The position numbers and the translations under genes were made by a program. A stretch of DNA of 64,000 nucleotides from Laetmonice hystrix (Eukaryota): contig OZ249436.1 in NCBI GenBank assembly GCA_965235115.1, positions 33,170,001 through 33,234,000 of the forward strand. The letters run 5' to 3'. Below are positions 7,101 through 63,849 of the stretch, piece after piece (within the stretch, counting starts at the first letter, position 1; the number at the start of each line of letters is the position of its first letter). Below the pieces are notes generated by a model. The model was not told where the DNA came from. It saw only the letters and a list, made by a program, of their open reading frames with translations, and did not search any database.

Positions 7101-9213
7101 AAATGTTCTCTAGTTGTTGGCTGAATAAAAAACTATTGTTTATGTGACATTACAATGTGGTCATTTGTATCAACATCGTGGCATGGGAGAAATTATATTC
7201 CATTGGAAGCAATAAAATACAAATTAATTAGGGTATTGTAGATAATTATATTGACCTACCACTGCTGTGGTCTGAAGTGATGCACAATTGGGTGGACCAG
7301 CAGTAAATTTGCGTAATGAAAGCCCTTTATGTCAAAGCTTGCCCGACTCATCGCCCTTTTAACCAGAGCTTACCCTTCAAGGGGTCAAGGATACAAAAGA
7401 TTCTGATGTACTCCAGTCTCCTTTCCTTTGAAGTCCCATACAGTGAAAAGTTGTGTACTGAATAAAACCTGACAGAAACTACGAAAACCCGTCACCCAAA
7501 AAATGCTCCTTGAACATCATAGGAATTCAGGCCGTGAAAATGTCATCTCAGACAGCTTGTCCTTATGATGTCACTTCTTCTTTTACTTTCAACTGGTTCT
7601 AAAAAAATGAATCCTAGACTTGTACCACTATGAAGTGAGCTGGGTGTCGTCCCAGGCAAGCCGAGCCGACTTTTGACATCCTGGGGGCTGGCCAAGGGAC
7701 TGCTGACCAGTTAGAGGGCTTGCCGCCTGTGTCTGTCAAACATCCCGCTGACAAGTAGAGCTTTAGGCCCTCCACAATCTGACACAACAAGGCTACACAA
7801 CAATGTGCTGTCCCACAAGACCATTGTTACCACAAAGACAATCCCTAACGTAGGTCTTCACGGCTGACCTCTATGAGGAAATTACTTGTGATATCCCGCG
7901 GACACAACAAAAAGTGATCGGTTTGTGACTTTTACGGCTTCTTCCACTCTCATGTGGTTTCAACCAGGGACAAGTCATCGATTAATTCATCTTCTCATTG
8001 TTGTAATGACCGTGTAGATGATACAATTAAAATATGGCGAGGACAAAGGATTTCCCTCATAAGTACAGTGAACTGGAATATATAAATTCAATCATGGATC
8101 AAGAGCCACAAGGAGTTTTTCACAAAAACCTGTACGTTACCCATTGTCGTTAATAAGGAAATGGCACCAGTTCAGTTAAAAGAAAACCCAAATTTAGTCA
8201 ATTGGTGTCCTTATGAGTCCATCTCGGAGTGGGAGAGCCATCAAGGTCCTCTCTAAGTGGTTCAATGGGTGTGCTTGCCATTGCTTCAACGTTCTTCTGA
8301 AGCCGCTCCATTAAGACAGCACAAGAGGCCTGCATGGGGACATAATGAAGCGGTTCTCAATCAATGAGCCATTGCACGCTGAAACCGGTGCTGCCGCCGC
8401 CCGTTCACCAGCGCAGCCTGAAAGGGCCGACACATGTCTGGCCGGCCTTTAAGTAGTGGGTAAACGTTTCATTACATTGGGCCCACCTCCGTTAACAATC
8501 AGCCTCAACTGAACCGTCACGGGGGATAGTTGAGTACTACAAAGGAATGAACCCCTGAAGGAGTCGGCCAGAAAAAGGTACGCTCAACTCCTTGAGGGCT
8601 AATCCCATGATATCGCCTTGTCTGTATTCAGCTGGGACAAGGACTCCTGGATGACCAGGGTCCTTGTCACATGACTCCGGCCGTCAATGAGAAGACATTA
8701 GTGTATGTGGGGGACGGTAGGGGCAGGAGGATGGCCGTAACAAGCCTCAAGGACTGCTCCTTCAAACCTGCCCCCCCCCCCCTCACAGAAATGATCAAAC
8801 TGATTAAAAGACCATGTTGATCTGATGACCACTGACTGAGAAGGCAGTGTCCAGTTTTGCTGAATCACTCCTATCAGGTCTGAGGTCATGACCCGATGAG
8901 GTCGCAGGAGTTTCCCAGATGACTAACCTTGTCATTACTGGCCCTTTTATGGTTTTTAGATTTCACAATTTTACTTGAGTAAAAAAACAAGCATTTTCAG
9001 GCGGCTCATAAAATGCATTGAACTGCAAATTGAGCTGATTTCGTAAGCCATTCCGACAGTTGTGAAATAATTTCTTATTAACCTTACTTTAAAATCTGAC
9101 TGGACTTGTGGCTTGTGTACACACACAAAATCTCATGTCCGACCCTGTCATTCTAACTCCCCCACTTTAACATCAAAATGGAACAAAGAAATGAAGTTGT
9201 TCACACTACTCAC

Positions 9214-9615
9214 ATGCAATCTGTACAGTTCCCCTGCTGCTGGTGATACGTTTGTGTCCCTCAGCGTTGACGCTGTTCCACGCATGGCACTCACACCAGT
9301 ACTTATCCCTGCCATAGTAATCTTCCACCGCCTGTCTCGTCACATCTATACTTGTCTCAAGGTATTTCACCCTGGACTCAGAATCCACCTGCTCCACATT
9401 GACGTGGTGTTTAAAATTCACCCACTGCCCGATACATTTGAAGAGAATCCGGAACTCCGGGGCGTCGATGGTTGAGGAGGCCTTGCAGACGATGGTGACT
9501 GGCCGGTTTTTCACGATGTAGTATGATGGTTCCGGTTCCTGGATGAACTCGGGCGGGCCCACAGTGTTGTCATTGGAGTCGGTCCCGACCAGCGCTGCCG
9601 AGTCCAGTAGCTCAC
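9214..9615 (-). CDS. unc5: UNC5 netrin receptor, coding exon for the first (N-terminal) Ig-like domain
   Basis: Translation PPEFIQEPEPSYYIVKNRPVTIVCKA...ILFKCIGQWV...SIDVTRQAVEDYYGRDKYWCECHAWNS...VQIA matches the UNC5 Ig1 signature (YIVKNKPV-C-A, IxFKCNGEWV, V+RQQVE, YWCQCVAW, +RIA|Y). On the minus strand the acceptor is tgtattgttacag|GTGAGC (AG at 9617-9616) and the donor is GCA T|gtgagt (GT at 9213-9212). The exon is 402 nt, phase 1-1. Confidence 0.93.
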
Positions 9616-11326
9616 CTGTAACAATACACAGACATTTATCAGTTGGAGAAGTAGTGATACACAAACTGATCATTTCTACCACCTAAAATCAGGGGATTTC
9701 TGGAAAAGGAAAATCTGGGGAAGGCGGGGAGTGGAAACCCTTAAAAATCACCCCCTCTCTCCCCTCCCCCCAATAAAACAGAGCCCCCTGCCAATCCTCG
9801 CTCATTATGCCACTAATTCGTTTTATTCGTACTTTTTACTAAATAATAGCAATTCATAAAAGTTTCCAATTGACAAATAATTGTCATTTATCAACGCCAG
9901 CATTTCCATGTAGGTACTGTTCCCAGCAGGTACACGTCAAACGTTAGATGAATGGCCACCTCTCTCTCCACGTGGTATATATCGCCACGTTATCTCCCAC
10001 AAAGGTGACATATGGCATGCACCAGTGAACGATTCTCTTCTCACGTGCGGATAGCCTACACCTCGTTTACAGCGCCACGCTATGGCCTTGTGTCAACCCA
10101 ACGCTCAGACCGGCCGGCCGACGGGCGGTATCTGTACGGGCCTCCCTAACTGTTATACAAGACAAACACACAAACACCCAGGTCAACACCTGGCCTGGTC
10201 TACAAACACAAACACGCACATAATGCTGGCGGCTGGCAGCGGTGGAGAATCTACGCCTGTCTGGACAGCCACCGTCCGTCTGTACGTAGAGCAACGTCTG
10301 GTGGCGAACACCGATACTACTCTCAGTAAGCTCTCACAGATGTTACAATCAACTCGGCCAGAATCAAGACATGGAAACCACCGGCAAATATCTGGTCGTC
10401 TGCTCGCGCTCTGCCAGCCATTAGTTTCTTTTTCTGAGTTTAGTTTTTAAGCGACTCTCCCCCTTTCGTGTGCCTGAATGTTTCTAAATAAACACTTACC
10501 GGTCAAAAGGCCATCAAAACCTTGGCTTTGAGTTGGTTTATGAGGGGTTCTAACTTTAAAAGTGTTTTCATTATTGGTTCCAGGATAATTTCACAAAAAC
10601 TCTCCCAAGCCGAACTATTAACAAGGCCCGTAAATATCTGTAAACTGATGTTAACAATCAACAGTTCTGATACTTCCTGACTAGCCACACTTGAGCGGTG
10701 TGTATTCCCAGTGAGTAAGCCATGTCCACTAGCAGAAGAAGGCTTTACTTTGAGCCCCAAGAAAAGACAGCCTGACATGATGAAGTCAATCGACCTCATG
10801 CCATCCATCCATTAAGTCCTCATCCTGGTCAACAAATATCTTGGTCCGGTGTCGTATGTCAAAGCCAACCCTTAGTGTCACTCACGCTTTATCTTGCAAA
10901 GCTGCTCTATATTTGTCAGCATTAGTTCAGTTTCAAAGGACATTCCCTGCACTTTGCAGCTGACAAAGTGACCCAGCCCCCAGTCACTGTCAGACTCTAC
11001 CACGTGAACCCTTTTAAGAAGATTTTCTAAGCTCATTCACTGCACTACTTTACACACAAAAAGCTAAGTACTTAAACGCATATCTCTAGCAAGGAATGCC
11101 ATAAAACCTTATTAGATTTCTCTGAATGTCTGAAAATGTACACGTATACGACCTATAGTGCTGACAGATATGCATCTCCATAGGTGGGGGAACCCTGTCA
11201 GCCTACGTCAAGGTACGCTGAGTAAATCCAAGCTACCCCTCAAAACAACAGTGCTACTTTAGAAGATCCCCTTTAGAACAAGCTTCGATTGTTAATACCC
11301 CGCTGAACGAGTCCAATCGTCGGACT

Positions 11327-19800: not shown

Positions 19801-20144
19801 AGACACCAGCAACGAGTATTCGATAGCATTTGTCCTTCCATTCTATAGTGACTAGTCCAGCCAGAGCTATTCCCAGTCATATTGACAGTTATCTAGCCAG
19901 CTAGCAAACCAGACGACAAGTCTGCTAGTTAGCCCCCCTGCCAGCCATCCAGCCACTTATAGCCAGCTGGAGAGTCCGTCTAAATTTGGCTGGTCTATAT
20001 ATGCATCTGGTAAATGAACGCATGTAGATTAGAGGCAATGTCGGTCCCTTCCCCATAGGAATTTGTCTATCCTGTTTATACAATAATCCGTCAAGTGGTA
20101 ACTGCCGTGTTTGTACTTTACCAAACCAGATTAGTAAATCCACC

Positions 20145-20172
20145 CATAGAGTCTATATTTATAGACTCTATG
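20145..20172. mobile_element. 28-bp palindromic micro-element CATAG...CTATG with 7-bp target-site duplication
   Basis: atccacc [CATAGAGTCTATA tt TATAGACTCTATG] atccacc. The arms are a perfect 13 bp and ATCCACC is repeated at 20138-20144 and 20173-20179. Confidence 0.65.
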
Positions 20173-21699
20173 ATCCACCTGATGAGTCTCCATTAACTTA
20201 CTATCCCTTGGTCGCACACATACCTTCCAGCAGAGAACTGAGCTCCTCACATCCTCTGTATGCTACGAACAGAAACGTTTTTTTTTCAGATGGTAGAGCA
20301 AGGACCAACAATTCCTACACAAATCATGTACTCGGGTTAAACGTGCATGGCTACTGGTTGATTATAATATCATAATATAGATGCGTGTCTTTATATACAA
20401 TTAACCCATTGAACTGGTGAACAGAAATGATCACTGTCCTCATATCCACCGACGCCCAATGCCTCTCTTGTTTTAGCCCTCTAATGCCATGAAACATTTC
20501 TTTTAGCTAGGGTAACTTTTTATGGTGTCGGTTATGGGCGCACAATGTTCATTTAATTATTTGGGACATCAGAACCATGGGGGTCAATTGGTCGCGGGGG
20601 ATTTGAAGAACTGCTGACTGGGCCTCCGATGTACTGGTTCAATGGTAGTAAGTACACACAGCCGACGGCCATTAGAGACTGATATTGTTGGCCTACTCCG
20701 AGAGCAATCACTCTTGTACATCAGAATATACTAATGTACCAATTCCCCCACATAACGTGCCACCACATCTATTTGGACTAATGGGGCGATTGATACACAT
20801 TGGTACTTAAACATGGGATCAGGATAATGACTTTATAATACTACCAACAAAATTTGCTGACCTCAAACACGTCCAGGCCAGTGATATGTTCAGCGGTTGG
20901 TTTCGAGAGGAAGCCAACAGTATTATTATTTCAAGATCAATGTGTGATCAACCATATGTCATGGCACTGTGCTCTCTCTCTCCCTTTGTATTCTTCTGTT
21001 TAGTAATTGACATCTCTGCCCATTATACTATACTGATGCAGGAGTTCGCTGATTGCTTCAATAATCAGACTAGTGAGAAAACGGTTTGGCAGACCTAATA
21101 AGGAATTTGTCCTGGACGACAGTCTGATGTGTCCCCCCGGCCCCGGGCAAGGACCTAAAGTCGAGAGGCATACATTGCCTTGGGATGGACCAGAGTGCTG
21201 AAAAGGTCACGTCCCTTGAACCGAGTGACATTCACGGCAACATTTACAGAAGGAATGGCATTTTAAATCAAGTACCAAGGAATCAACAAGCTTCCCTAAA
21301 CTAGAACCAAATAATGCTGGAAGGATGCATTATGTGTCACTCTGCCAATAGCATGTACCACCCCACGTTCACGTATATCGTGTGTCACTCTTCAAATCTC
21401 ATCGAAGAAAAATACTGCTTTCATGACGACGGCCGCCGCCCCCGACAGCATGTACAGCAAGAGTGAATGATCGTGAGGACTATGGAGCTCGGAGCAACAT
21501 GTTTCGCAATTTGTCCGGTCAATACTTTTTAAGCGCGTTTGAATTATTTCTTCAGCCTGCAACCCCAAGTCATACTACATGACACAAAAACATTGCTAAG
21601 TTCTAAAGTCTTCACCTGAATTTCAATTCTCTTATTTTTTTTTACTTCTTGGCACGTGTACGCAAGACCAGTTACTGGTAAGTTAAACTGGCAGCGACG

Positions 21700-35455: not shown

Positions 35456-36437
35456 CTGATGTTGGCTGGATGGGGATGGAGGCCAACGGGGATCGACCTA
35501 ACGTCTACGACTCAAGCCAAACTCAGCATCAATTCAAAATCAAGCTATTTCAGAGCAAACTATAAATGTAAGGTTAAACGTCGGTCGTTTGATCACTTGA
35601 TATCCTATATTTTAGCATTATCCTGTTAATAAGCATGGTTCCTTTCAGTGCAATACACAGATCTACCTTAAATGCGCATTAATTCTGGACATAAATTCAT
35701 ATCACACTAAAATGTGCCGGTGAGGATCTCAGCTACTGTAGGCCTTGGCTACTTAGAGATAATTCCTTACTTCTCAACCCATACTTTCTCTCGGCTGCCT
35801 CTCCTACTAACACTTTTTTTGAATTTCTCGAGGTAAAAAAGATCCAACTTCAATCTGACAGGCATGGCTTGCTTCAAAATCGTCGCGAAGGACCAGCAGC
35901 ACAATCACAAGGGAGGGGAATTAGACATGCAATAACGCTCAGAATGTCAACGATGACAGCTACACTTGTAGAAATGGCCGTGTTAAAAATGTGACTTTGA
36001 AAGCAAAAGTCCATTTTGATGTCTGCCCGTCTCCTATTACTGCTACAAGGGAAACCTAAAGAGGGTCTTGTGAGTGGTCTGGTTGGATATGTTTATTGCC
36101 TGGCATGTTTTTTTGGGGAAAGAAACAATTTACAGATGAAATAGTAAACCCCGTACACTTCGTATTTCATCTCATCTAATGTACACAAGAAAAGGTGCGA
36201 GTTTTTCAGTGAAATCAAAATATAATCAAATCTAAAGTGTACTGCTTGCCGTGCTATACTTGTTTTTTAAACAATACAGATCTCAAGTAATCACTTAGGG
36301 GACTCCATTTGTATGGACAATACCTTTTGCGAAGCGTGAAACTTCCCCTGCAGACCAGGTTCCTTCCTTCCCTTCTTTTTGGTTCCAAATCTTTTATATA
36401 GGCTCAGTTCGGCATTTAAAGTTTAAGAGAAAAGCTC

Positions 36438-37690
36438 AGACAACCGTGATGGGTCTCCTGTTACTCTGTGTACACAGGCTGTGACAGCCGTGATGGGTCC
36501 CCAGACACTGTCTGTGTGAACTGGATGCGACATGAGACAACTGAGATAGGTCCCCAGGCACTGCCTGTGTGAACAGGCCGTGGTGTGAGACAACTGAGAT
36601 GGGTCTCCAGACACTGTGTGAACAGGACGCGACATGAGACAACTGAGATAGGTCCCCAGGCACTGCCTGTGTGAACAGGCCGTGGTGTGAGACAACTGAG
36701 ATGGGTCTCCAGACACTGTGTGAACAGGACGCGACATGAGACAACTGAGATGGGTCCCCAGGCATTGTCTGTGTAAACAGGCCGTGGCGTGAGACAACTG
36801 AGATGGGTCCCCAGACAGTGTCTGTGTGAACAGGCCGTGGCGTGAGACAACTGAGATGTGTCTTCCGACACTGTCTGTGTGAACAGGCCGTGGCGTGAGA
36901 CAACTGAGATGGGTCCCCAGACAGTGTCTGTGTGACAGTGTCTGTGTGACAGTGTCTGTGTGAACAGGATGCGACATGAGACAACTGAGATAGGTCCCCA
37001 GGCACTGTCCGCGTGAACAGGCCGTGGCGTGAGACAACGGAGGTGGGTCCCCAGACACTGTCTGTGTGAACAGGCCGTGGCGTGAGACAACTGAGATGGG
37101 TCCCCAGACAGTGTCTGTGTGACAGTGTCTGTGTGAACAGGATGCGACATGAGACAACTGAGATGGGTCTCCAAGCACTGTCTGTGTAAACAGGCCGTGG
37201 CGTGAGACAACTGAGATGGGTCTCCAGACACTGTCCGTGTGAACAGGCCGTGGCGTGAGACAACTGAGATGGGTCCCCAGGCACTGTCTGTGTGAACAGG
37301 CCGTGGCATGAGACAACTGAGATGGGTCTCCAGACACTGTCCGTGTGAACAGGCCGTGGCGTGAGACAACTGAGATGGGTCTCCAGACACTGTCCGTGTG
37401 AACAGGCCGTGGCGTGAGACAACTGAGATGGGTCTCCAGACACTGTCTTTGTGAACAGGCCGTGGTGTGAGACAACTGAGATGGGTCTCCAGACACTGTG
37501 TGAACAGGACGCGACATGAGACAACCGTGATGGGTCTCCAGACACTGTCTGTGTGAACAGGCCGTGGCATGAGACAACTGAGATGGGTCTCCAGACACTG
37601 TGTGAGCAGGACGCGACATGAGACAACTGAGATGGGTCTCCAGGCACTGTCCATGTGAACAGGCCGTGGCATGAGACAACCGTGATGGGG
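36438..37690. repeat. 53-bp minisatellite with 49-bp and insertion variants (about 23 copies)
   Basis: Unit gagacaactgagatgggtccccagacactgtctgtgtgaacaggccgtggcgt, period 53 (36791 to 36844). The minus strand lacks stops, which gives three ORFs of about 400 aa. Confidence 0.97.
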
Positions 37691-40600
37691 CTCTGCCATG
37701 ATGCAGCACACTTCAGACACAGTTCGCAAGCTCACTCACCACTTTCCTGGGATTCAAAAATGACAAGTCCTGGATAAAAATTAGATGCTCCCAGACTGTG
37801 CAACTCGACGACTTTACCAATGTCAACAAAAAAGGTACATCTATCACACATTTTTATACTGTATGATTTCACGACGATTTTCTTCAGACCTTACAGTTTG
37901 AAACATTTCTTTCAGGTTATAAAAATGCTTGATCGTGTGTAGACGAAGTAGAGGAGTTGTGGTTCTTGGTAATCTTTACAATAATTATCATGGGTTTCAC
38001 TTAATCTCCAATATGACATGTCTACGATTAGTGGCTATACCTATCAACAGGGAATCTGTATTTTTTTCTATACTGGAAAAAAACCCCACGATCCTTGAGC
38101 TCTGTTGAATGAGGCATCTAGCAGCCCAGGGCAAGCATGCAGTCAACACCCACGACCCCTCAAAGTCAGACAGACCGAGGCAGCAGCAGCCTGTCAACTC
38201 AACTATCCAGGTCACTTCTTTTTAGTCTTTACAATGAAATACTACTGTTCTGCCACCAGCGCTAGATGAAGAGATAGGGTTGCCAAGACAACCATTCAAA
38301 CCCTCAGTCCATGACTAAAGGCGTTCTGGTTCTTCTACGGTCTCTTGCCCTTCGCAAGGAGACCCACACTGAGTGTCTGGCCTAGACTTACTGGAGCACC
38401 TGAATATCAAAGTGTTTCATAATTATATAACACACAACTGATGAGCTCTGATTCATTATTTTGTAGACACCATGTACTGGGTAGATACAGATACCCCTTT
38501 TTTCATAGACCCTGTAATGAAGCATTATATTTATCTGACCTCCGACTAACAATTCAGAGATCACTGTATTAGTGCCATCTGCTCGTCTCGCTTACATTTA
38601 CGTTTAAAAGTAAACGTTATTGGACTGGAGCGCCCACATTCCCCCACTATGGTTGACAATAGTTGGACCAGTCTTCCTATAAACGATCGCTGGGTCTAAC
38701 CCGCACTGCCACCATTGACTGCACCCATCCGCTGTGGACACCGCCTCATATAAAACCACTTTTTCATGTACAAAAGTACATAAAGTCCATGAGATGGGGC
38801 CCGCCATGAGACAGACACCTGTACTGGCCAATCACTCATGTCTCTTTACCTTTGACCCGGGGTGGTGCAGTTACATATGTGTATGTACCTTATTTACTCC
38901 CTACCACCCGACCTGATCCCCTATGATATAGTTCCAAGTGTTAGATGCGCCACCATCCCAACCCACTAGCCCCGTTCACAGTCACTGCCCACGTTATTTT
39001 TATAAACAACTACTGGTCTATTTGGTTTTTTTTCGCCTTACATCACCACCTGAATGCTCCGTTATTTACATAATAAAACAGGTTACCTTTTTTTTCGTTT
39101 GAGGTTATGTTTCCCCGAGACAAGATATATTGAGGATAAGACAGTGATTCAGAGGGACCTTTGTATTTGCTTGGAAACATGAACGCCTTTTAAGCAAGTA
39201 ACTGCTGGTCGCTGGCAAACTATCTCTGGCTTATTAAGCTATTTACCTGTGTCGTCGGATACCTCGACAGCCAAGCTGCAGGTGTATGTCATTAACTTCA
39301 CTGCTTATAGCTTAACTATAATGACATGTGAACTTCCAGCCTTAAATTTGTTTAAATGGAGCAAATATGCAATGGGAAAGATAAGGCCGCAATTTGGACG
39401 CGCTGTGGCCAATTTTCTTTTCTTTCAATTCATTGTATCGCGGACGCCACATCTCTGCTGACCTTCATGTCACAAAATGACCTTCCCTCCTCCAATAAAA
39501 AAACAAACAAAACAATTCAAGCCATTGTTACATATGTCGTCGGCTCCTACGGGCACCTATCGCCTACCGTACCCGGCTTGTATGTCAACAGACATTCAGA
39601 AAACCTCACGAGGCCCTGAGGGGACTGAGCAAGGGTCAGGGACAAGGGTGGGGCTGGGGATGTGATGTGGGGGTGTAGGGAAAGGTAATGACCAGCACCC
39701 ACCCCCCAACAATACCCCCCTCACAGGTCAACAGGTTCACCTACAGATTAGCCGGAATCTGTATACCTGTGCTGTAGTGGACAAAACGTCATCTGATGGA
39801 CAAAACGTCATCTGATACCCCAGGCACCTGGCCTGCTCCAAGAACAAACAACTCCAATTACGATGTTCCTCACCGCCATGGAAACTCATTTTGACAGGCC
39901 GACAATACGATTTATGACCTGATCCAAATTTCTAAAACACAACACTACAATGTGTTTTGATTTCCTCACAATATAACCCATCGCGCATACTTCGGAAAAT
40001 TACTGTATGCGAGTAATTTACTTAATACAAATGGGGCTTCGCTTCCAATGTAGTAGTTACCTGTATATCCTGTATAGTTGTCAAAGACCGCCAAGCAGTC
40101 AATAGGAACAGCACTAAATGACAGGTGTTGTTTCAGGGCAGTTTGTTTTGCTAAGTGTGACAAGGAGTTGATTTGTGAGAAGACTGTCCCGTCTATACTA
40201 TGAGGGCATTGTTCTCTGTTGGCTAAGACAAACATTTAGTGTGTCCCCTTCCCTTCGCTCCCTGTGATAGGTTCGTGTGGGGGCGGTGACCGGCCGCGGT
40301 CATTTGTCCACTGCCTGTCCAGTAGTGGGTGTGGTCAGTGACAATGGTTGACCAGGGCCCTCAGGGATGTTTGAGTACACCCCTGTCATTACCTGAGGCC
40401 ATGGCCAAGACGGCGGCCAAATCACGGGGTCCCACCTGGCCGCCGGCTCGGACCGTCCGGTGCAGGTGAAAGGGGCACACGGTCCCCTCGTCCCTGAGGG
40501 ATACTTCCTCAACCAGACGACATCCAGGACTGGTAACACCCAGGACTTATGAAGACAAGGGGATCCAACCCGAGTGGAATAAAGGACCTCAGGGTGATCC

Positions 40601-40816: not shown

Positions 40817-42049
40817 TCAATCTATGCTGAGAGGATTCACATTTTTGAAAGGATATACTTCAGGTAATGCCTTCGTCATTGTGGAAGGAATGTCTTCAAA
40901 TGCAAAGACTCTATTTGCCGACAATAGAACCCAATGGAAGAAAGTGTTCATATTACAGTTCCCACCAAAAACGTGATTATTCCCCACAAGGAGCCATTGA
41001 TAGTCGGCTGAACTTCCCATGTTCAAGATGGCTCTCACCAAGTCCTGCTGCCCTAATGAACAAACAATTTGGAACCAAATATACCGGCAATCAGAGAGAG
41101 AAACATAAGCCAGGACGAACACTGAAGTTGGTAGGCGGCACTGCCAACCTTTTGAATGAGTTCCAGAACACCGAGAGTGAAGAATTATAAACCCTAATGA
41201 GAAAGACCTCCATAACCTAGTGCCGATACCTGGGTAATAAAGGGCAGGAAAATATTTGAGAATTACAAACGGTGTCAGTGAATGGGGCGGGAGCTGCATG
41301 GGATGGTGGATCCTGGTGGTATGCAGTGAGTGGGAGGAGGTGGCGTTAGGAGGCAGTGAGTGGAGGGTGTAGGTGTACAATGACTTGAGGTTATACCCTG
41401 AATGGTGGGTGGAGACATAGAGTGGATTGGAGGATGGGGTACCTATACAGTGGTGGAAATGGTGTGCGCAATGTAAGGAAGGCCAGTGTAAATATAGTGA
41501 GTGGAAGATGGAGATATCAGGGGGGTATACTACAAGTACGACCATAAGTGGAGGTGGGACCAGTATACAAAAACGCAAAGCACCCTCACCATAAAACTCA
41601 ACGTTACTTTTAGCAACACTTTTCACAGCGGAATCAGCATTTTGATTCCATTCGGGACAGCACGTCCCCACCTCAGCATTGTTTATACAAGCCCTGCCCA
41701 GAGGCGCTACTACAACAGCTTGGGGTGGACTCATCAGTGGCACTGGACGGGGAAAACCTTGATTTGTTTTCCTACAGTATCCATGGCACCTGATCCAGTT
41801 ACCATTATAGCTCCACTCAATTAAATACTGGGGATTGTTTCCCAGTACTGACACACTAGGAGGTTGGGGGCTGTAGTGTCCTGTAATAAGCCACCAGCCA
41901 GGCCACCTAGTCCACTGATGGGCAAAAACCCACCGGAACTCTCCCCATGCTATGATGTGAAACCGTAAAGTCCAAACTTCAAAGCTGGTTACCAGGTCAC
42001 TACAACACTGAAATAGAATGAGTGATTTATTCCCCAAATCCTCAACCAT
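40817..42049 (-). CDS. Uncharacterised 410-codon ORF (no recognisable domain; may be non-coding)
   Basis: This is the longest non-tandem-repeat ORF in the window. The start context gtcATGG is strong and there is an in-frame stop 4 codons upstream. The composition is unusual (W/H/C-rich) and the middle is low-complexity. Confidence 0.25.
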   Translation of the reverse strand: MVEDLGNKSLILFQCCSDLVTSFEVWTLRFHIIAWGEFRWVFAHQWTRWPGWWLITGHYSPQPPSVSVLGNNPQYLIEWSYNGNWIRCHGYCRKTNQGFPRPVPLMSPPQAVVVAPLGRACINNAEVGTCCPEWNQNADSAVKSVAKSNVEFYGEGALRFCILVPPPLMVVLVVYPPDISIFHSLYLHWPSLHCAHHFHHCIGTPSSNPLYVSTHHSGYNLKSLYTYTLHSLPPNATSSHSLHTTRIHHPMQLPPHSLTPFVILKYFPALYYPGIGTRLWRSFSLGFIILHSRCSGTHSKGWQCRLPTSVFVLAYVSLSDCRYIWFQIVCSLGQQDLVRAILNMGSSADYQWLLVGNNHVFGGNCNMNTFFHWVLLSANRVFAFEDIPSTMTKALPEVYPFKNVNPLSID

Positions 42050-42382
42050 GACTCCAAATTAATTTGGACGGTGAACTCCTACAAGAAACTTCTGATATGG
42101 ACTTTGAGATGTCAGAGAGCCTGTTTCTAGATAACAGTTAATGTGATTACTTCACCTTTGAGTATATTACTCCTACTCATCTTGGTTAAAGACAACCATG
42201 TGTAGTAAATAAAACCTTCATATCCACTATATTCATGAAAATTATTCATACCTAAAATACCTCAACGGGCAAATACAAACCAGATGTACAAATAACACCT
42301 CTACTGACCCCCACCCCCCACACCTACCGGTAGGCCTATATGTTCCTCCCATAATCTGAACCTCCGGCAACAATAGTTTCCG

Positions 42383-48500: not shown

Positions 48501-49292
48501 TAACACCTGCAGGACTCTGTCAACTGTCAACCGTCACCAAACGGTTTCCATACCCCAAACTTCAACAGTCCAATTGAGAAGAATATGTTAGGTATAGGTC
48601 TGCACTGACTTTCTATATAAATTAGGAAAGTGGCGTTTCAAACACTGTGGACAACTTGGAGAAACCTCTGGTGGGCATGCTGGATCCTGGGTTCACACGG
48701 TCAAGAAATGAATCATTTACTATGACCTTCGTGACCGACAGTGAAGTTTCCAACTGTTCATACCTTTCCAAGGACCAATTAATCATGTCATCATCGTCAG
48801 ATAAGAACTAGGCGTTTCAGTCTATAATCTAATAACGTTTCCCTCCGTTTTCCAATTCGGATACTTGCAACTCGGATACGTACTCGATATGCATATTTTG
48901 AATACCTTGGACATTTTACATATTTTAATAATATCACAGATTTGAGCTTGGACCTGAACAAATGTCATCCTGGACTGTTACCGTCTGACCCAACATTTAG
49001 GCCGGGGACTAGGCTAATGTCATCCTTGAGAGCGCTGAGGTCAGTGCGGGTCAGTCTACAGTGACCAAAGACAGCTGGTTTGGGGCAAAGATTCCCCCTG
49101 GCCCAACTCCTGTCACTCCTTCCTTGACTCTTCCCACCTAATTAACCCTTGACCACCCGCACACAGCCCTATACCCTGGGAATAAATCTTACTAAGGCAC
49201 TCCCCATTTTGTCCGGATGGATTATATAGGAAAATACTCTTTTTATAGCTGTTCAGCATGGGAAAAAAATCAAATACCTATTTTCGTCAAAT

Positions 49293-49326
49293 CAACGAGA
49301 CTAGACAGACCTGTCTAGTCTCGTTG
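49293..49326. mobile_element. 34-bp palindromic micro-element CAACG...CGTTG with 7-bp target-site duplication
   Basis: gtcaaat [CAACGAGACTAGACAG ac CTGTCTAGTCTCGTTG] gtcaaat. The arms are a perfect 16 bp and GTCAAAT is repeated at 49286-49292 and 49327-49333. Confidence 0.65.
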
Positions 49327-52166
49327 GTCAAATTAAGCGTTTCCGTTCAGTATAAGCCGACTTTCCTTACCAGTCATTCAGCCGATTAGAGCTTGATTTA
49401 AGTTTCTGATGAACGTCTACCCTAAATTCCGGCGTCGTCTCTATCAAGGCGACCCAGATTCCATCTGATGATGTAGGGGGGAAACCAGCCATGTCCTATG
49501 TGTCAGGAACTGACTGAACTGTTCCCAGGTCTTTAGGTCTGGTCCGTGTCAGTCTCAGGTGACCATCGTCTGGCTGGCTACTCTGTCCAGTCTGTATACA
49601 ACGGTGACACCCTGCACTACTACCTGCCCCAGGGGGGTCGTGGTCAGTAGTGGTCAGTTAGGTAAACACTGGACACTTTAGCCGTCGGCGGCGGCGTCTG
49701 CACCGGCTCAGTTTCAGGAGGGGCGGTGCGGATGATCCGGATAATCGGACAGGGAGTGAATAAAACGTTGTTGTCACTATCTCAATCCCTTCTCCTTGAG
49801 CGCTTTTAATTATTCCCTGAAATGTACTCTCTGTAAGACAAATAAGCAGAACGAGCGCTGAAGAATCCGAATTTATGCATTACAAAACGGTCTAAGCTAC
49901 ATTCATGTTCATAACACACCATTCACACTTGCTAGTTTACCTCCGTCCCTTGTGAAAAAAAGGCGGAAAACAGACTTTTAAAGTTTCTAAACAATCCAAA
50001 TGAAAATGGCCGCATAACAGCCATATTCTTTATCTGTTATAGAGAAACCTTAGCCTCAATCCAAGGGCCACCAAATAGGGTTGACCACGCCTTAGGCATC
50101 ACTTCACACGACTATGACATAAGCAGCTCCCTTGCCGCGGCCTGTTGCACACCTGGCCGACGGTATCTGATAACCCTGCCCAATTTTGAGCACCTGGCCT
50201 GTCGGAGAGCGAGAGAGGCAAGGCGCTGACTGACAAGGTGCCTTGTATCCCTGACACTAATCTGGACACAGGTAGGTATGGCGACCGATACTCTGGTCCA
50301 ATTACAACCGAATCCATCACTCAAGGGGCGACCATTCATACCGCCCACAACATCACCCACAACACGGACGTCACAACAAAGCTGCACCTAAAAAGTATGC
50401 TGTACTCTACTCTATACGCACATAAACTAACGAAGCATCCTTATTGTGTCTACCATTTCCTATAATTGACGTATCATTTTTCTATATTTCCATGCGAACC
50501 AAACTCGGCATGTTCCCACAAGTATCGGCTGGTTTCAACGCCTCCTCATGAAGACTGTGGTCGAGCTGCGAGTTTACCGACCGACCATTACTAGGGCCCA
50601 GGGGTCAGCCAGTCCCTGAGCTGCCATGACAGATGCAGCTGGTCGTATATTGCCCGCCTTTTTGCCCTGTCATTCTCAGCATAATGTACGGTAGTACCAG
50701 CCTTATATGATATCGGCCACCAATATGTTAACACATGACGACAATGAAAGATACTGGGTGACGCCAAGACTTCACATCAAACATAGGGTAACAACGAATA
50801 TCACAAACATGCTACTATGTCAACCATCAGCATATATGGACTTTGGCGATACTGATACATGTACTATATCTTTTTTAAGGGCACCTTGAATGAAACGTGG
50901 CGACACTCAGCATCTGATAAATTGTTACATACACTTGTTAGCTTCCATATATAGAACTATTTCTCATCTGAACCATGTGTCTACAGTGATCCATGATTTT
51001 ATTTCTCCATATCTCTCCCCCCCCCAACCACAACCAATGTGTACGTCTCCAAATTACGCTACAAAGAACAAAAAGTAAATGTCATAAAACTTTTAGATTA
51101 ACAACCGGGTGTGGTCTGTCCCCAGGCAAGGACCCTCCTCCGGACTTCAGCGGGCGGACGTCGCACTCCTCATGTCATTTATTGCTGTCGATGCCATGAA
51201 GAAACAAACAATAGGTCTTCAACCTGCTGTTACCCCACCCCGAACACCTGAGTCAGGGACGGGGGTGGCAGCCCAGATCGGGTGTCTTCCCCCACCTGCA
51301 CCCCTGCTGATCTTACCCCCATTTGTGTTACCTGTTAAGAGCATTACCGGGTGATAGCCATTCAGGCCTGTCATTGTGGCCATCAACTTGAGCAGTCTCT
51401 GTCATCTCGACGCCCACTTCTCTAATATCATATTAGCAGGAAGGTAGCATTACCAAAACACACTCATGGTAGCCTAAACCAGCACAAAGCTATCCCTGGT
51501 AAGTATACAGAACAGGTCTTGAAAGGAAATCATATTGCACACTCAATCTACTAACCGTCAGTACCAAGAAAAGCTGTTCTAATTATCTGTTTCGAAAAAA
51601 AATAATTTAGGAACTTTTCTTCTTTTCTTGGTGAACTACGTAATACGACATCTACATCTACACGATAACACGTTCTTCTTACGTAGTTTTCAAGGGAACA
51701 TACTACACCATCACGACAACCTACGTAAAACATGCCTCATCCAGTCCATCACGCAATGAGCAACTATTGAAATAATTCAAATACCCACCTTTACTTTGTA
51801 TTATCTCTGCAGTTGCATGACAAAAACATAATGAACAATGTTTTAGTAACTTTTCATAAAAGGCAAAACAAACGATTTTTTGTTTCTTTTCAGTACTATT
51901 TCAAATGCATGATTAGAAATACAAGAAACGAAACAACTATTTTTTTCTTTTGACAGTATTTCAAATGCATGGAAAGAAAAACATTAAAGGGAGACAATTG
52001 CACCTTATGTTTGAAAGATTCCAACTACATGTATATTTCCGATAATAGCTACCTGTGTGTTTGCAAATTCATCTCCGACCAGATGCCAATCATGCTTGGT
52101 AGAATATCGCCGTATAGCCTGTCGTATGTACACGTACATGAAACCCGGTTTTGGTACATCCGGTTG

Positions 52167-57400: not shown

Positions 57401-60400
57401 CTTCAGTTCACACCCCCTACTGATCACAATTGATGTGGCCAATTGATTCTATTAACCAACCACTTCCAGCCGACCTACCTCCCAATCCCCCAGTCAATGT
57501 AATAATTATCTAATGCTAATTAAAGCTTGTATTAAGGCACCAGACACCTTGGTGCATGCTGCAGCCAAGCCGTACGGCGTACTGATTCATACGACCGTGG
57601 CCGGCCGATCACCCCGTGAAAACTGGCGGGAAGGCGGTCTGCCTTTGCTCACTTTTAAATTGATTTATTACCAGGGCAAGGCACATGGTCAGTAATGAGT
57701 GAATGTTTGATGAATCATCAACGTGCATACACACATGCCTCAAGACAGATCATGGAAGAAGCCACTAGTTACTTGACATGTTTTATCATGTTAAAACATT
57801 CTTGTTCCTCCACATCCGTCCTTTTATACCCTAGGTACAGAATGCGGTTTTTTTGCACTTCTTAATCATGAATCATCTTTATATCAGTATGCTACACACC
57901 GTCTTATAAGAAAAAAACAAGACTCATGTTCAGAATAAAATGAGAAAATAAATATCATTATGGAAGCTTAAAATCCCAATATGTATTTCACTCACATGCT
58001 CTCAGGCTTAAATGCTTCATAGACGACATAAAAACGTTATTTTATGACATAAACACATGTGAAGACGTCCGACAGGTAGCACTTAATGACATAATTAACG
58101 TTGCCAACTGTCATTATTTGCTCTTACTGCCAACTATCCGCATGAATACTTTACGGTAAGGTCAAGCTCATTTCCCCTAAGTAGTATGTTGATTATAGGC
58201 ATTTAGTGGATTTGTGGTCGATTAAAGCTATCAAATACTTCTAATAAATGTTCACATAAAAATGGAGACCACTGAGACGACGTTAAGTTTACACATTATT
58301 GTAAACGTTACATGGAGTAACTGGTCTAAGAGCAGGACTTCCCTGACTTTGTTCAGAGGACTTCAGCACCAGTGACTATATCACCAGCGACCAGCGTCCA
58401 TGGTCGGTTGGACGTTTTACTGATAACGATCTCAGTGAGATAAAACCGACACCTGCAACTTCTGGTATCTAACATGAAATGTTAGGTCGGACAGATGGTT
58501 CTGTCTGTAAGCTGGTCGTTTGATGCTCACCTCTACAGTCCTGACAAGTGTAAGCTGGCGTGAGAGATAACCTGGCCATTGTCAGACTCTAGGTGAGCAA
58601 CCTGTAATTACTCAACACCCTCGGTACCCGCCCTAACCTTTCCCGCCTGGAAAGACAGGACGTGTAAGAACGGTTGCACCAACGGAACAATACTTTTACA
58701 GTGACTGATGGAAATCACACTCAGTCCAGGTGGAAAAAATAATCTTTGCCATCATTTCAACACAGCCTATAGTCATTAGGAAGTTTTATAATGGTAAACG
58801 CGAATAGAAGAATATTTTTTTGAAAGTACTGCTTCTATATTGTGCTGTTCTTATACATACATGATGTTTTAGTTTACTCCTAATATAGTTCCTAATAGAG
58901 TAAATATAGTTCCAACATATGGTCATACATACTCTTTTCATTTCACGCAACCATGCTCTACAATTTAAAGCTCCATAAATTTAAAGTTTACATTCCACAC
59001 GCACGTTTAAAGTTTTTAGTCAACTTTAACAATGGATCTCTAGTTTTAGCAGTTAGGAAGTCTAAAAACTCTCAGATATTTTCGTATTTCTTGCCCTCCG
59101 CCCGGCACCTGTCTACCATTTGTTTTGGCAGCAGTCCACCTTATCTATATACGCCGCCGTTACCAGCCACACAAATAAACCATTTCTTCTTCGACTGGAA
59201 TGCACATATGGAACTTAATATAAAAACATTTTGGGCTTTTTATTATAAACACTTCAGACAATAGCCCCGTGACTGACTGCCCCCCCCCCCCCCCCAACAT
59301 CATCCGTCCCGTCACCACTTTTTTCTCCGGATCCACCCATAAAAAATAATCAGAGATCACATCATCTGTAGTACAAAAGGCATCACCCCTGAACTTAGTA
59401 ACTGCGGCTTTCTTCCCTGTTGAGTAGGTAGGTTGATCGAGGTGTATTTGAGCATCTCTAATGGTGGTCTATATAAGAGGGTACACCCGATACGTCGACC
59501 GGCCCTGTGGTTTCTCAACTGTCCGCTCTGATCTCCCCCCACCGTACGTATCTCATCGTTTCTCCAACATGTCTTTGTCCATCTCCGCTTACAATCGCAA
59601 ACTTTTGTGTACGCTGTCTTTCAGCGTGCACCCCCTGCCAGGCCCAGGTGTGCATTCCGATGTGAATGGCCACCGCCACCCTCGCAGCTAACACCGGTGA
59701 CGTTTACCCCAAAACGTTATGATGATTTTCCGTGAAATATCCGCTCTGCCAGCGCCCCTGCCGCGTGGTCACCATTTCCTGCATACTGTGGCTGGTACAT
59801 GCCACCAGGAGCCCTCATCTTCACGACTCCCAGACTTGGATTCACCATAGATTTGACGGACAGATCCGCCCGGCCCGGTGATCGAGCTACAGGTGTGTTT
59901 TCAATCAGTTTCTTTATACCGCGGTGTGTACCGCTCGAGTCCGGTGGCGACTCCTACCGGTGGTGTATCCGGTCACCGTAACGAACGAGTCCGACTGCCA
60001 GACTCAGTCGGACCCGCTTGGCACGGTCATGACTACAATTTTCTTTTTACCCTATTCCAACCCCTACAACCGTCAGCGGGGCAGGTGTGCCCATTGCACA
60101 TGAGACCATTTTAACGATGAAAACGTTCTCAAGAGAAATATGGAAAATTTCCTGTCAAACTCACTGACCTCAGACAAAATTCTCTGACCTCAAATACCCA
60201 TTTTCCTTTTGTTAATCAATCTTAATTTATCATCCTTTGACTATAACTGCCCCTGAGTTAACCTCCCGCTGTCATGCACCCACTGGGAGATGATTTAAAA
60301 GTCATTGAGGATCATGTCTATACACGGTGGGTAAGCAACCCATGTGGAACCAATGACACCTGGCACAATCCCGTACCCTGAGTGATCCTCTATAAATGAT

Positions 60401-60522
60401 CCCCTTCACGACCCGACCAGGCGTGTCGGTTTAACAGGCCCGACATGGACCGACACAATCAACCCTCAGCCTACCGCCTCTGTCATCGTACACTTCAGTG
60501 GGGTCTGTCACAGGTATATCTT

Positions 60523-61588
60523 CAGGTTAATGGTATCTCACAGGTTTACACACAACCTCTATACCAACATCTCCAGGTTTATGGTATCTCAAAGGTTTAC
60601 ACACAACCTGTATACCAACATCTCCAGGTTAATGGTATCTCACAGGTTTACACACAACCTCTATACCAACATCTCCAGGTTAATGGTATCTCACAGGTTT
60701 ACACACAACCTCTATACCAACATCTCCAGGTTAGGGAGTATCTCACAGGTTTACACACAACCTGTATACCAACATCTCCAGGTTTATGGTATCTCAAAGG
60801 TTTACACACAACCTCTATACCAACATCTCCAGGTTTATGGTATCTCACAGGTTTACACACAACCTCTATACCAACATCTCCAGGTTTATGGTATCTCACA
60901 GGTTTACACACAACCTCTATACCAACATCTCCAGGTTTATGGTATCTTACAGGTTTACACACAACCTCTATACCAACATCTCCAGGTTAATGGTATCTCA
61001 CAGGTTTACACACAACCTCTATACCAACATCTCCAGGTTAATGGTATCTCAAAGGTTTACACACAACCTCTATACCAACATCTCCAGGTTTATGGTATCT
61101 CACAGGTTTACACACAACCTCTATACCAACATCTCCAGGTTGATGGTATCTCACAGGTTTACACACAACCTCTATACCAACATCCCCAGGTTAATGGTAT
61201 CTCACAGGTTTACACACAACCTCTACACCAACATCTCCAGGGTTGTGGTATCTCAAAGGTTTACACACAACCTCTATACCAACATCTCCAGGTTAATGGT
61301 ATCTCACAGGTTTACACACAACCTCTATACCAGCATCTCCAGGTTAATGGTATCTCACAGGTTTACACACAACCTCTATACCAACATCTCCAGGTTTATG
61401 GTATCTCACAGGTTTACACACAACCTCTATACCAACATCTCCAGGTTGATGGTATCTCACAGGTTTACACACAACCTCTATACCAACATCTCCAGGTTAA
61501 TGGTATCTCACAGGTTTACACACAACCTCTATACCAACATCTCCAGGTTAATGGTATCTCACAGGTTGACACACAACCTCTATACCAG
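60523..61588. repeat. 51-bp minisatellite (about 21 copies)
   Basis: Unit ggtatctcacaggtttacacacaacctctataccaacatctccaggtt(a/t/g)at. 51 = 17 codons, which gives the repetitive ORFs 60530-61624 and 60786-61661. Confidence 0.97.
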
Positions 61589-63849
61589 CGCTGTCGTGAG
61601 GGGACGTTACTACCTCCGCTATAATGACAACGGACGGGTAGAAACAGGTAAATCCCGATAATCCTTCGTCAAAGCATCAGAGCAAGTCAAAATCATAGTA
61701 ACCGTGTGTTCAAAGCCCAGTCCTGATCCGTTAAATCTAAAATACTAACTTCCCTAGAGGATCAAGATGATAAGAGCGCATCTTCTCATATAAATACCCT
61801 AAACATGTACATCTATACACACTGCCCCATGGATTTTACTGACAGCAATGAAATATATCATAATAATAACCGATAAGTCGGTAAATCTTGTATTATATAC
61901 GTGCATATTGTCACATCATCTCTATACTTTTTGTCCAGAGGTTGCATCGGAATCTATAAGCTATATATTACTTGTCGGCCTATGTTTTCACGACACAGCC
62001 ACGGAAACCAATTATTCATTACATGGTAATTTAGGTATGTGTATTTAAAAAATCCTCAGATATAAAGATTATATTATACATTACAGTCCAATGGAGAAGT
62101 CCACTACTTCAACAGGCTTCATACAATGAGACTCACCTACAAAATAAAAGACAAAGAAAATACATTAAAACATTTCACTGATTAAAAGTGTGTACAATAA
62201 GAATGGTAAGGCATATAATTGTCTCAGAAGTAAATGCTACACAAAACCCTTTGGCTCCTAATAAAAGTACATTGCATTTCATTACATAGAAATCAATACA
62301 CTTTCTGTTCCACTGATTCCTTACTTTGCCTGGGATTACGTTTCAGAATCGTTTTACATTGTACTTCTCCACTTATACCCCTTTGATAACTAGAAAAAAC
62401 AACATGGGTCTCGATACAGTTTCTCGGACAACCCCAGTGGAGATTAGCACTGTCAGTTGCTAATCATGTAGAGAGACTAAGATAATCTCAACAGGTACAT
62501 ATCCTAATCATCTCCAAACCTAATTGGTTCTCCTTCAGGTACGCCCCGACATATCTTGTTATTATCAGATATCAGTGTGTTTGTCTTTCTATGTCAAGAT
62601 ATTCCCATGTTGATACGTAGATATAATTGGTTGTCTTTCTGGTGTAGACCGATATTGATGTTTGTAATCAGTTTAGCTCATCCCTTAATCCACAATGGTA
62701 TCACGGATTATATTCAAGTCAATCATGCACTGGAACTGACTGAATCTTTTTATATCGAGTTTCCTTGATAAATCCAAATCCAAGAGTTTAAACAGGAAAA
62801 AAACTTTGTCGTCCAATGCTAAAATATAATGTTGAAAATCAATTCCTTGATTAAAGGAATGGGAAACGAAGCAAGTATTGCCCTACCAAATCTTTATAAT
62901 TTCAACGCCAACTGTAAATGAGTCTGAGTGGCCATATAAAGATCATATGATTATAATAAGTTTCTCAAGTCAGGTCACTTGACAGTCCAAACATGTAGCA
63001 AACAATAATTAAATATCAGACTGCGGCAGCGTGAGTATGCCGCGTGCGAACATTGAGGCAGGCCATGTGTTTGCTGGCAGTGACTTCATGCTACACTGAC
63101 CCACAGTTCATCACCAATTATGGCAGTTATCTTAAGGAAATGTCCAGACCAGTTCACTCGGTCAACACTGTCACCTTCAGTCTCAACGCTAACCTCATCT
63201 CACTTCTCTCTGACCTAAATAACTGTTTTAACATTCTCCACGATTGTTAAAGTAGCTTTAACAACCACAAAATCTTGTTTTTCTTTCTGGAACAACGAAG
63301 TTGTACTTTCCATCCTTAATAGTTGGTCTTGAATATCAGCAATGTGTCGTCGACGAAGATTAAATAATGTATTGATGACTTCCAATCATTGGACTAGTAC
63401 CTTAAAGGAGCTCCAACAATACAACGTACCTACCCTCGCTCGATCCTTGCCTGGACAAGAAAACTTCGCCACTCTGCACGGAGAGATCGTAGCACGTGCT
63501 GGTATATCTGACTCATCCCAACTGGGACCCCCACCAGATTCCAATGTGGCGACCGAATCCTCCAGCAAACACTGCTAGCAGATAGGGCAAATCCTCGGCT
63601 TACGTTTGGGCCCCGGCCAGCAATCCGAGATGGTCTCAAAGCTGTGATAACTATAAGAGTTCTCAGTTCAAACGGCAACTCCCCTGGTTGATGCAAAGTA
63701 CAGTCTAAGTAGGACCTTATCACTTCTTCTTCCAGAAATAACCTCCATAAAGAATTCTACTCCTAAGACTGAGGGCCCCAATTATTCCGGAGTAACACAC
63801 ATACGTGAACGGTTCCCCAATGTTCACGAAGGCAGACCCTATTTCTCCT

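What the first reader, a model, noticed from the sequence alone, without database searches (positions are those of the whole stretch)
49286..49333. Second micro-transposon (34 bp, CAACG...CGTTG), also with an exact 7-bp TSD
Seen: a perfect 16-bp-arm palindrome with a 2-nt centre, flanked by GTCAAAT on both sides. Its sequence differs from the element at 20145, but the architecture is identical: CA...TG ends, a 2-nt loop, no interior and a 7-bp duplication. Inference: two independent families in 64 kb suggest an abundant, probably under-annotated class of TIR-only hairpin elements below the size cut-off of standard MITE finders. They may be mobilised by P-superfamily transposases and scatter cruciform-forming sites around developmental genes.
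Basis: partly seen in the sequence, partly recalled or inferred. Interest (0 to 1): 0.72.

Follow-up and report, generated by a model that had tools for sequence, protein, structure and literature searches.

The report
Transposon excision scar, not a micro-transposon
The 34-base palindrome with its 7-base duplication is real, but it is most likely the scar left when a 1-kb cut-and-paste transposon of the P-element type jumped out, one of about 180 such scars in this animal genome, and not a new class of tiny mobile element.

Summary
Window 49286-49333 holds a 7-bp direct repeat, a perfect 16+2+16 palindrome, then the same 7-bp repeat. Chance cannot explain it.

It is not a self-standing element. 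Its arms are the outermost bases of the 28-bp terminal inverted repeats of a ~1-kb non-coding transposon, which has about 9 full copies and 7-bp duplications.

The genome holds at least 126 short remnants of that transposon, 17-54 bp long.
- They show dozens of different junctions: 36 among the 93 remnants of 25-54 bp, and about 18 more among the 33 shorter ones.
- Nearly every remnant has its own 7-bp duplication.
- All but one keep at most 19-21 bases of either end.
- The joins are 1-4 bp microhomologies, blunt joins or small inserts.

This matches the published repair junctions of Drosophila P-element excision, where the limit is 17 nt. The duplicated sites follow GTNNNAC, the target motif of Galileo, a P-superfamily transposon.

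The second palindrome, at window 20145, belongs to a related family with 51 remnants and the same pattern.

The "micro-transposon class" reading does not. No autonomous partner was found, and read data could not be obtained. This is a known mechanism in a new family; its modest interest is as a natural record of end-joining repair.

The parts
49286..49292 (.). Left copy of the 7-bp target-site duplication (GTCAAAT)
   Evidence: Identical to 49327-49333. It fits the GTNNNAC-type target motif at its first two positions.
49293..49311 (+). Retained outer 18-19 nt of one terminal inverted repeat of the ~1-kb parent element. Base 49311 (C) could come from either end, a 1-nt microhomology.
   Evidence: It matches positions 1-19 of the 28-bp inverted repeat of the full copies L005 and L019.
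49311..49326 (-). Retained outer 16 nt of the other terminal inverted repeat, read on the minus strand
   Evidence: Perfect reverse complement of positions 1-16 of the parent's inverted repeat.
49327..49333 (.). Right copy of the 7-bp target-site duplication (GTCAAAT)
20138..20179 (.). Second scar, from a related family: ATCCACC, then 15 nt of one end joined to 13 nt of the other end (28 bp), then ATCCACC
   Evidence: It is one of 51 genome-wide remnants of a family whose ends begin CATAGAGTCTATATTGAAC.

Best explanation
The palindrome is a donor-site excision footprint. Shown steps first. A ~1-kb non-autonomous DNA transposon exists in this genome with 28-bp perfect terminal inverted repeats and 7-bp target-site duplications, and the window's palindrome is built from its outermost bases. 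Inferred steps follow. A copy once sat at GTCAAAT in non-coding DNA of the unc-5 locus. A transposase supplied in trans cut it out. It cut exactly at the element/duplication boundary on one strand and about 19 nt inside the element on the other. Each flank therefore kept both copies of the duplication plus a 3' single-stranded tail of up to 19 nt of the inverted repeat. Because the two tails have the same sequence they cannot pair along their length, so end joining aligned them on a single C:G pair (base 19 of one tail with base 16 of the other), trimmed, filled and ligated. The result is 19+16-1 = 34 bp, necessarily a near-perfect palindrome. The enzyme is most likely a P-superfamily (Galileo/1360-like, THAP9-type) transposase. 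The scar itself is most likely inert.
For: 1. Parent element. Full copies of 972-1005 bp carry the same ends extended to a 28-bp perfect inverted repeat, with perfect 7-bp duplications on L005, L019, L031, L032 and L033; L023's duplication is not intact.
2. Scar series. There are 93 remnants of 25-54 bp (control 0) and 33 more of 17-23 bp (control 1). The 93 have 36 different junctions, 74 have a perfect 7-bp duplication and none has an 8-bp one. Flank comparison shows 86 are independent sites.
3. Sharp retention limit. In 92 of 93 remnants each side keeps at most 21 nt, and at most 19 once the CCGG ambiguity is allowed for, although 28 nt would be recognisable. Among the copies I could list or fetch, nothing lies between 54 and 335 bp.
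4. Junction types. 49 have 1-nt microhomology, 6 have 4-nt, 16 are blunt and 22 carry inserts, some visibly templated. This is the same spectrum as the experimental Drosophila P{wa} excision junctions, where both duplications and at most 17 nt per end remain and one junction recurs in 14 isolates (PMC2895639). The 17-nt staggered P cleavage is described in PMC7776569.
5. Prediction met. The only 4-nt self-complementary stretch in the tail (CTAG) predicts a 20-bp product. It occurs at 6 loci against a chance expectation of about 6e-4.
6. Second family. A related family (12/19 terminal bases shared, both with G16 and C19) has 51 remnants, and its 34-bp '19+16-1' form (7 loci) is the second commonest junction after a 31-bp form (8 loci).
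7. Target motif. The duplication logo is G(49/72) T(54/72) NNN A(58/72) C(43/72), matching the Galileo consensus GTANTAC with 7-bp duplications (PMC4168063).
8. Enzyme supply. The genome has at least 90 matches to the P/THAP9 transposase RNase-H-like domain, several in identical multi-copy groups with long open frames.
Against: No autonomous element with these ends was found. No copy encodes a transposase, and the ten P-transposase loci I could read lack the end sequence. The superfamily assignment therefore rests on duplication length and motif and on cut geometry. The retention limit is 19 nt, not the 17 nt of the Drosophila P element. The 34-bp form recurs at 12 independent sites, which a mobile 34-bp unit would also explain.
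Confidence: 0.85

Rival explanations
1. True micro-transposon: the 34-bp inverted-repeat-only unit (and the 28-bp unit at 20145) is itself recognised by a transposase, excised and reinserted, making new 7-bp duplications.
For: The identical 34-bp sequence lies at 12 independent sites, each with its own 7-bp duplication. Remnants outnumber full copies by about 10 to 1.
Against: The 34-bp form is only 12 of 126 remnants. The remnants run continuously from 17 to 54 bp with dozens of junctions, including 8+1+8-nt forms that cannot plausibly bind a transposase. Recurrent junctions are also seen among independent experimental P excisions (PMC2895639). The same '19+16-1' geometry is the commonest junction in family 1 and second commonest in the second family, as a repair rule predicts. 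From general knowledge, Drosophila P transposase needs internal binding sites beyond the terminal repeat (PMC7776569).
Confidence: 0.07
2. Transposase-independent internal deletion: the 1-kb element lost its interior by replication slippage or hairpin processing between its inverted repeats, leaving the two ends.
For: Inverted repeats can promote deletion. One 335-bp and one 54-bp derivative exist.
Against: Slippage across a 28-bp perfect repeat gives no reason for a sharp stop at 19 nt in 92 of 93 cases. It also does not explain the empty size range between 54 and 335 bp. Blunt joins and templated inserts are end-joining signatures. The 335-bp derivative itself keeps exactly 17 nt on one side, as expected if a cut tail was joined to a partly re-synthesised end.
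Confidence: 0.05
3. The scars are excision footprints, but of a superfamily other than P whose cleavage chemistry is unknown (for example Dada or Kolobok-like) and which happens to cut with a long stagger.
For: No P-type transposase could be tied to these ends. The stagger inferred here (19 nt) differs from the only measured P value (17 nt).
Against: 7-bp duplications with the GTNNNAC motif match the published Galileo pattern. As far as I know, a long 3' stagger has been described only for P. P-type transposase genes are abundant and apparently young in this genome.
Confidence: 0.12

Closest known systems
Drosophila melanogaster P-element excision footprints (17-nt staggered cleavage: Beall & Rio 1997, as cited in PMC7776569; repair junction tables: Chan, Yu & McVey 2010, PMC2895639)
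   Same: Both target-site duplications are kept. Only the outer bases of each inverted repeat remain. Joins are by 1-4 nt microhomology, blunt ends or short templated inserts. A few junctions recur among independent events.
   Different: Here the duplication is 7 bp rather than 8. The maximum retained tail is 19 nt rather than 17. The events are natural, fixed in a reference genome of a non-insect invertebrate, and come from a non-autonomous 1-kb element.
Galileo and 1360 (P superfamily, Drosophila; PMC4168063)
   Same: 7-bp target-site duplications with a palindromic GTANTAC-type target motif, and ends starting with CA.
   Different: Galileo has very long, foldback-like inverted repeats and a known THAP-type transposase. 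This family has 28-bp repeats and no identified transposase. I found no report of genome-wide scars for Galileo.
BuT5, a ~1-kb non-coding MITE mobilised by a divergent P element (PMC3698922)
   Same: It is a ~1-kb non-coding element that depends on a P-type transposase supplied in trans.
   Different: There is no sequence relation. I did not read BuT5's duplication length from the paper, and its master element is known while this family's is not.
Tc1/mariner/pogo excision scars, such as the TAGGCCTA scars that other agents report in this same genome (s1-330540, s1-347161; not checked by me)
   Same: They are a duplicated target plus a few terminal bases of each transposon end, left by end joining, and so palindromic.
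   Different: Those scars keep 2-3 nt per end at TA sites. These keep up to 19 nt per end at 7-bp sites, reflecting a much longer staggered cut.

Membership tests
Donor-site excision footprint of a cut-and-paste transposon | Both copies of the target-site duplication are retained, with only terminal bases of the two element ends between them | tested here: met
   74 of 93 remnants have a perfect 7-bp duplication (82 have at least 6/7). The interior consists of inverted-repeat termini plus 0-10 nt of filler.
Donor-site excision footprint of a cut-and-paste transposon | A parent element with the same termini and the same duplication length exists in the same genome | tested here: met
   about 9 full copies of 972-1005 bp plus derivatives, with a 28-bp inverted repeat and 7-bp duplications.
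Donor-site excision footprint of a cut-and-paste transposon | Heterogeneous junctions with end-joining signatures and a fixed upper limit of retained bases | tested here: met
   36 junction types among the 93 longer remnants and more among the 33 shorter ones, showing microhomology, blunt joins or inserts. The limit is 19 (21) nt in 92 of 93. The predicted CTAG-mediated 20-mer occurs at 6 loci.
Donor-site excision footprint of a cut-and-paste transposon | The same site is occupied by the full element in another haplotype, individual or species | not testable with these tools
No related genomes are available.
P superfamily (P / 1360 / Galileo) DNA transposon, non-autonomous member | 7- or 8-bp target-site duplication with a palindromic target motif | tested here: met
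   7 bp, logo GTNNNAC. Galileo's consensus is GTANTAC (PMC4168063).
P superfamily (P / 1360 / Galileo) DNA transposon, non-autonomous member | Unusually long staggered cleavage that leaves long 3' tails of the inverted repeat on the donor (17 nt in Drosophila P) | tested here: met
   This is inferred from the scars, not measured. Up to 19 nt is retained per side in two families. The value is 19, not 17.
P superfamily (P / 1360 / Galileo) DNA transposon, non-autonomous member | Mobilised by a THAP plus RNase-H-like (THAP9-type) transposase carried by an autonomous element with matching ends | tested here: inconclusive
   There are at least 90 PF21787 matches in the genome. None of the ten loci I could read carries the end sequence, and no copy encodes a transposase.
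MITE-like 'micro-transposon' (a mobile inverted-repeat-only unit) | Copies share one defined internal structure and length, as expected from copying or moving one unit | tested here: not met
   there is a continuous 17-54 bp series with dozens of junctions (36 among the 93 remnants of 25-54 bp), and the 34-bp form is 12 of 126.
MITE-like 'micro-transposon' (a mobile inverted-repeat-only unit) | Demonstrated mobility: new insertions, or clean empty versus filled alleles without a full-element allele | not testable with these tools
   No read or population data could be obtained.

The most novel reading that the evidence does not exclude
The remnants that keep both near-full tails (the 34-38 bp forms) are still substrates for the transposase. 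They would be real inverted-repeat-only mobile units, the smallest eukaryotic transposons known, seeded by excision scars and then spread. The 12 independent 34-bp copies would then be partly transposition products.
Probability: 0.07. Interest if true: 0.7.

Novelty: new member of a known kind. Interest (0 to 1): 0.33.

Why it matters
As a mechanism this is textbook: a cut-and-paste transposon leaves a scar. There are three reasons for modest interest.

First, about 180 natural scars from two related families form a ready-made catalogue of how this invertebrate's germline joins long non-complementary 3' tails. The same kind of data had to be produced experimentally in Drosophila.

Second, the scars point to a 19-nt stagger. 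If confirmed, this extends the odd long-stagger chemistry of the P transposase outside insects, with a different cut distance.

Third, it is a practical warning. Short perfect palindromes with flanking repeats should not be annotated as a new class of tiny mobile elements, or as designed cruciform sites, before a parent element has been sought.

Tried and rejected
- **Chance:** rejected.
- **Transposase inside the larger copies:** open frames of L031 (3.7 kb), L035, L036, L040 and L001 gave no transposase domain. L040 holds only an unrelated RNase H / reverse-transcriptase-like piece. tblastn of P-transposase frames against all candidate long copies found nothing.
- **End sequence near P-transposase genes:** absent in L041-L050, both as the exact 16-mer with up to 4 mismatches and as the two-family consensus.
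- **Parent copies of the second family:** only coordinates could be listed, about 11 non-scar ends. No sequence was available.
- **Further families with the shared end consensus:** none. All 69 hits belong to the two families.
- **Prior reports:** a literature search for genome-wide P-type scars outside Drosophila found nothing specific.
- **Template-switch or hairpin-repair origin without a transposon:** rejected, because a parent element with the same ends and duplication length exists.

Full report
**Observation**

Window 49286-49333 reads GTCAAAT, a 16-nt arm, AC, the reverse complement of that arm, and GTCAAAT again. The companion structure at 20138-20179 is also exact: ATCCACC, a 13+2+13 palindrome, ATCCACC.

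These are the only two palindromes in the window with arms of at least 10 nt and loops of at most 12 nt, and both carry an exact 7-bp flanking repeat. A looser scan (8-nt inverted ends, 7-bp repeat, length up to 3 kb) gave 0-1 hits in each of 20 shuffles. The window lies at G000:C1:33170001-33234000 of a 627-Mb animal genome.

An exon encoding the unc-5 netrin-receptor N-terminal domain lies on the minus strand at 9209-9682 (PF25609, E 1.5e-29). The palindrome lies about 40 kb away in non-coding DNA. No open frame of at least 60 codons covers 48.3-50.1 kb.

**What the arms are**

The 16-mer arm occurs 353 times in the genome, against 15 for the reversed control. Some occurrences are the two ends of elements 972-1005 bp long. 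Their ends extend to a 28-bp perfect inverted repeat, and they are flanked by perfect 7-bp duplications: GTAGTAG on L005 and GTCTGAG on L019.

A BLAST of one element against the genome finds about 9 full copies at 92-100% identity, plus fragments and three copies enlarged by insertions. None encodes a recognisable transposase. It is a young, non-autonomous, MITE-like element.

**The short forms are a series, not a unit**

Requiring only the outer 12 nt of both ends within 39 nt gives 93 loci (control 0). I fetched all of them and measured them.

| Property of the 93 remnants | Result |
|---|---|
| Length | 25-43 bp, plus one of 54 bp |
| Different junction sequences | 36 |
| Perfect 7-bp duplication | 74 (82 with at least 6/7) |
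| 8-bp duplication | 0 |
| Independent sites, by flank comparison | 86 |

The rest of the 93 are one tandem array and a few segmental copies.

Relaxing the arms to 8 nt and the total length to 23 bp or less adds 33 more remnants of 17-23 bp (control 1).

**Retention limit**

On either side the retained stretch matches the parent's inverted repeat for at most 21 nt in 92 of 93 cases. The figure is 19 nt once the palindromic CCGG at positions 18-21 is allowed for. Eight remnants need 19 nt unambiguously. Only one remnant keeps more (32 nt).

Among the copies I could list or fetch, nothing lies between 54 and 335 bp. The 335-bp derivative keeps exactly 17 nt on one side.

**Junction types**

| Junction type | Loci |
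|---|---|
| 1-nt microhomology | 49 |
| 4-nt microhomology | 6 |
| Blunt | 16 |
| 1-3 nt insert | 10 |
| Insert of 4 nt or more (some are obvious local copies) | 12 |

**Mechanism**

This anatomy is what excision by a transposase with a long staggered cut leaves behind.

For the Drosophila P element, the cut is at the element boundary on one strand and 17 nt inside on the other (PMC7776569, citing Beall and Rio 1997). Each donor flank therefore keeps the duplication plus a 17-nt 3' tail of the inverted repeat. The two tails are identical rather than complementary.

Chan, Yu and McVey sequenced independent repair junctions after P{wa} excision (PMC2895639, Tables 1-3). They found both 8-bp duplications, up to 17 nt of each end, 1-3 nt microhomologies, blunt joins and templated inserts. 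One junction was recovered in 14 isolates. The natural series here has the same structure with a limit of 19 nt.

For the window's scar, base C19 of one tail pairs with G16 of the other, giving 19+16-1 = 34 bp. The product is palindromic simply because both tails carry the same sequence.

I tested one prediction. The only 4-nt self-complementary stretch in the tail is CTAG at positions 9-12, which should give a 20-bp product. That exact 20-mer occurs at 6 loci, against about 6e-4 expected by chance. Cleavage geometry and repair route are inferred from the scars, not measured.

**The second family**

The ends of the 20145 palindrome define 51 genome-wide remnants (control 0) with variable junctions. 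Ten of the 15 I could read have perfect 7-bp duplications.

The implied end sequence shares 12 of its first 19 bases with family 1, including G16 and C19. Its 34-bp '19+16-1' form (7 loci) is the second commonest junction, after a 31-bp form (8 loci). It also has a 19+19 blunt form and a 19+1+19 form.

Two families obeying one repair rule argues for scars rather than two separate births of mobile micro-units. A degenerate pattern for the shared end consensus finds 69 loci (control 0), all from these two families. The "abundant class" therefore comes down to two sister families, at least for this end type.

**Superfamily**

The 72 distinct perfect duplications give G 49, T 54, N, N, N, A 58, C 43, that is GTNNNAC. 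Galileo, a P-superfamily transposon, makes 7-bp duplications with consensus GTANTAC, GTAGTAC or GTATTAC (PMC4168063). GTAGTAC itself occurs twice among the scars here.

The genome has at least 90 matches to the P/THAP9 transposase RNase-H-like domain. Several are identical multi-copy groups with open frames of 400-830 codons, so a supply of enzyme is plausible.

I put the scar reading at about 0.85. The P-superfamily assignment, given that reading, is at about 0.7-0.75.

**Rivals**

- **A mobile 34-bp unit.** It would explain the 12 identical copies. It would not explain the continuous 17-54 bp series, the sharp 19-nt limit or the parallel in family 2.
- **Transposase-independent deletion between the inverted repeats.** It gives no reason for a stop at 19 of 28 nt, or for the empty size range.
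- **An unknown non-P superfamily with a long stagger.** It remains possible until the autonomous partner is found.

**What could not be done**

I therefore have no presence/absence data and cannot show a full element at this very site. Parents of family 2 were listed only by coordinate. The organism was not identified. Other agents' notes call it a worm or invertebrate and report very many Tc1/pogo-type TAGGCCTA scars (s1-330540, s1-347161). I did not check those notes, though they fit a genome that keeps many excision scars.

**Verdict**

The mechanism is known (P-type excision scar) and the family is new. The "micro-transposon class" reading is not supported. Interest is modest, resting on the natural repair catalogue and the inferred 19-nt cut.

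Noticed in passing
L034 (G000:C5:23939864-23944913), locus 494-1520: Composite structure: the 7-bp repeat CTATTAT, 18 nt of an element end, 4 extra bases, a complete ~1-kb element whose far end is fused to an 11-nt end remnant, then CTATTAT again. It looks like an aberrant gap-repair product, or a re-insertion into its own scar.
   Followed up: partly
L075 (G000:C11:1083030-1083504); also G000:C20:19934359-19934733: Scars that have been amplified as part of local tandem repeats: four copies of a 31-bp remnant at 61/122-bp spacing, and three or four 17-21-bp remnants at about 85-180-bp spacing. They show scars being carried along by later duplications.
   Followed up: partly
G000:C13:27885262-27915102, C10:2268047-2378914, C1:28833403-28860487: Arrays of near-identical fragments of the P-transposase RNase-H-like domain, each with the same stop codon, spaced about 1.6 kb apart (C13). 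A transposase piece appears to have become part of a tandem repeat or satellite.
   Followed up: no
G000:C5:34982490, C8:19628391, C11:30185764, C5:33260210 and other groups: Groups of P/THAP9-type transposase matches with identical scores and open frames of 400-830 codons. They are candidates for currently active P-like transposons and for the missing autonomous partner.
   Followed up: partly
L103, L104, L106 (G000:C3:3757389, C3:11203578, C4:33173400): The same 38-bp scar with the same duplication lies in three paralogous sequence copies (flanks 85-100% identical). The excision therefore predates the duplication or spread of the host sequence, which may itself be a repeat.
   Followed up: partly
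window 36426-37735: All three minus-strand frames are open for about 425-430 codons over a region of short tandem and inverted repeats (the CTGTGTG/ACAGTGTC motif recurs). This is low-complexity repeat rather than a gene, with no Pfam match.
   Followed up: partly
window 40820-42058 (minus strand) and 60386-61621 (plus strand): Two long open frames (413 and 412 codons) without a significant Pfam family. The second has only weak sub-threshold hits. Their nature is unknown.
   Followed up: no
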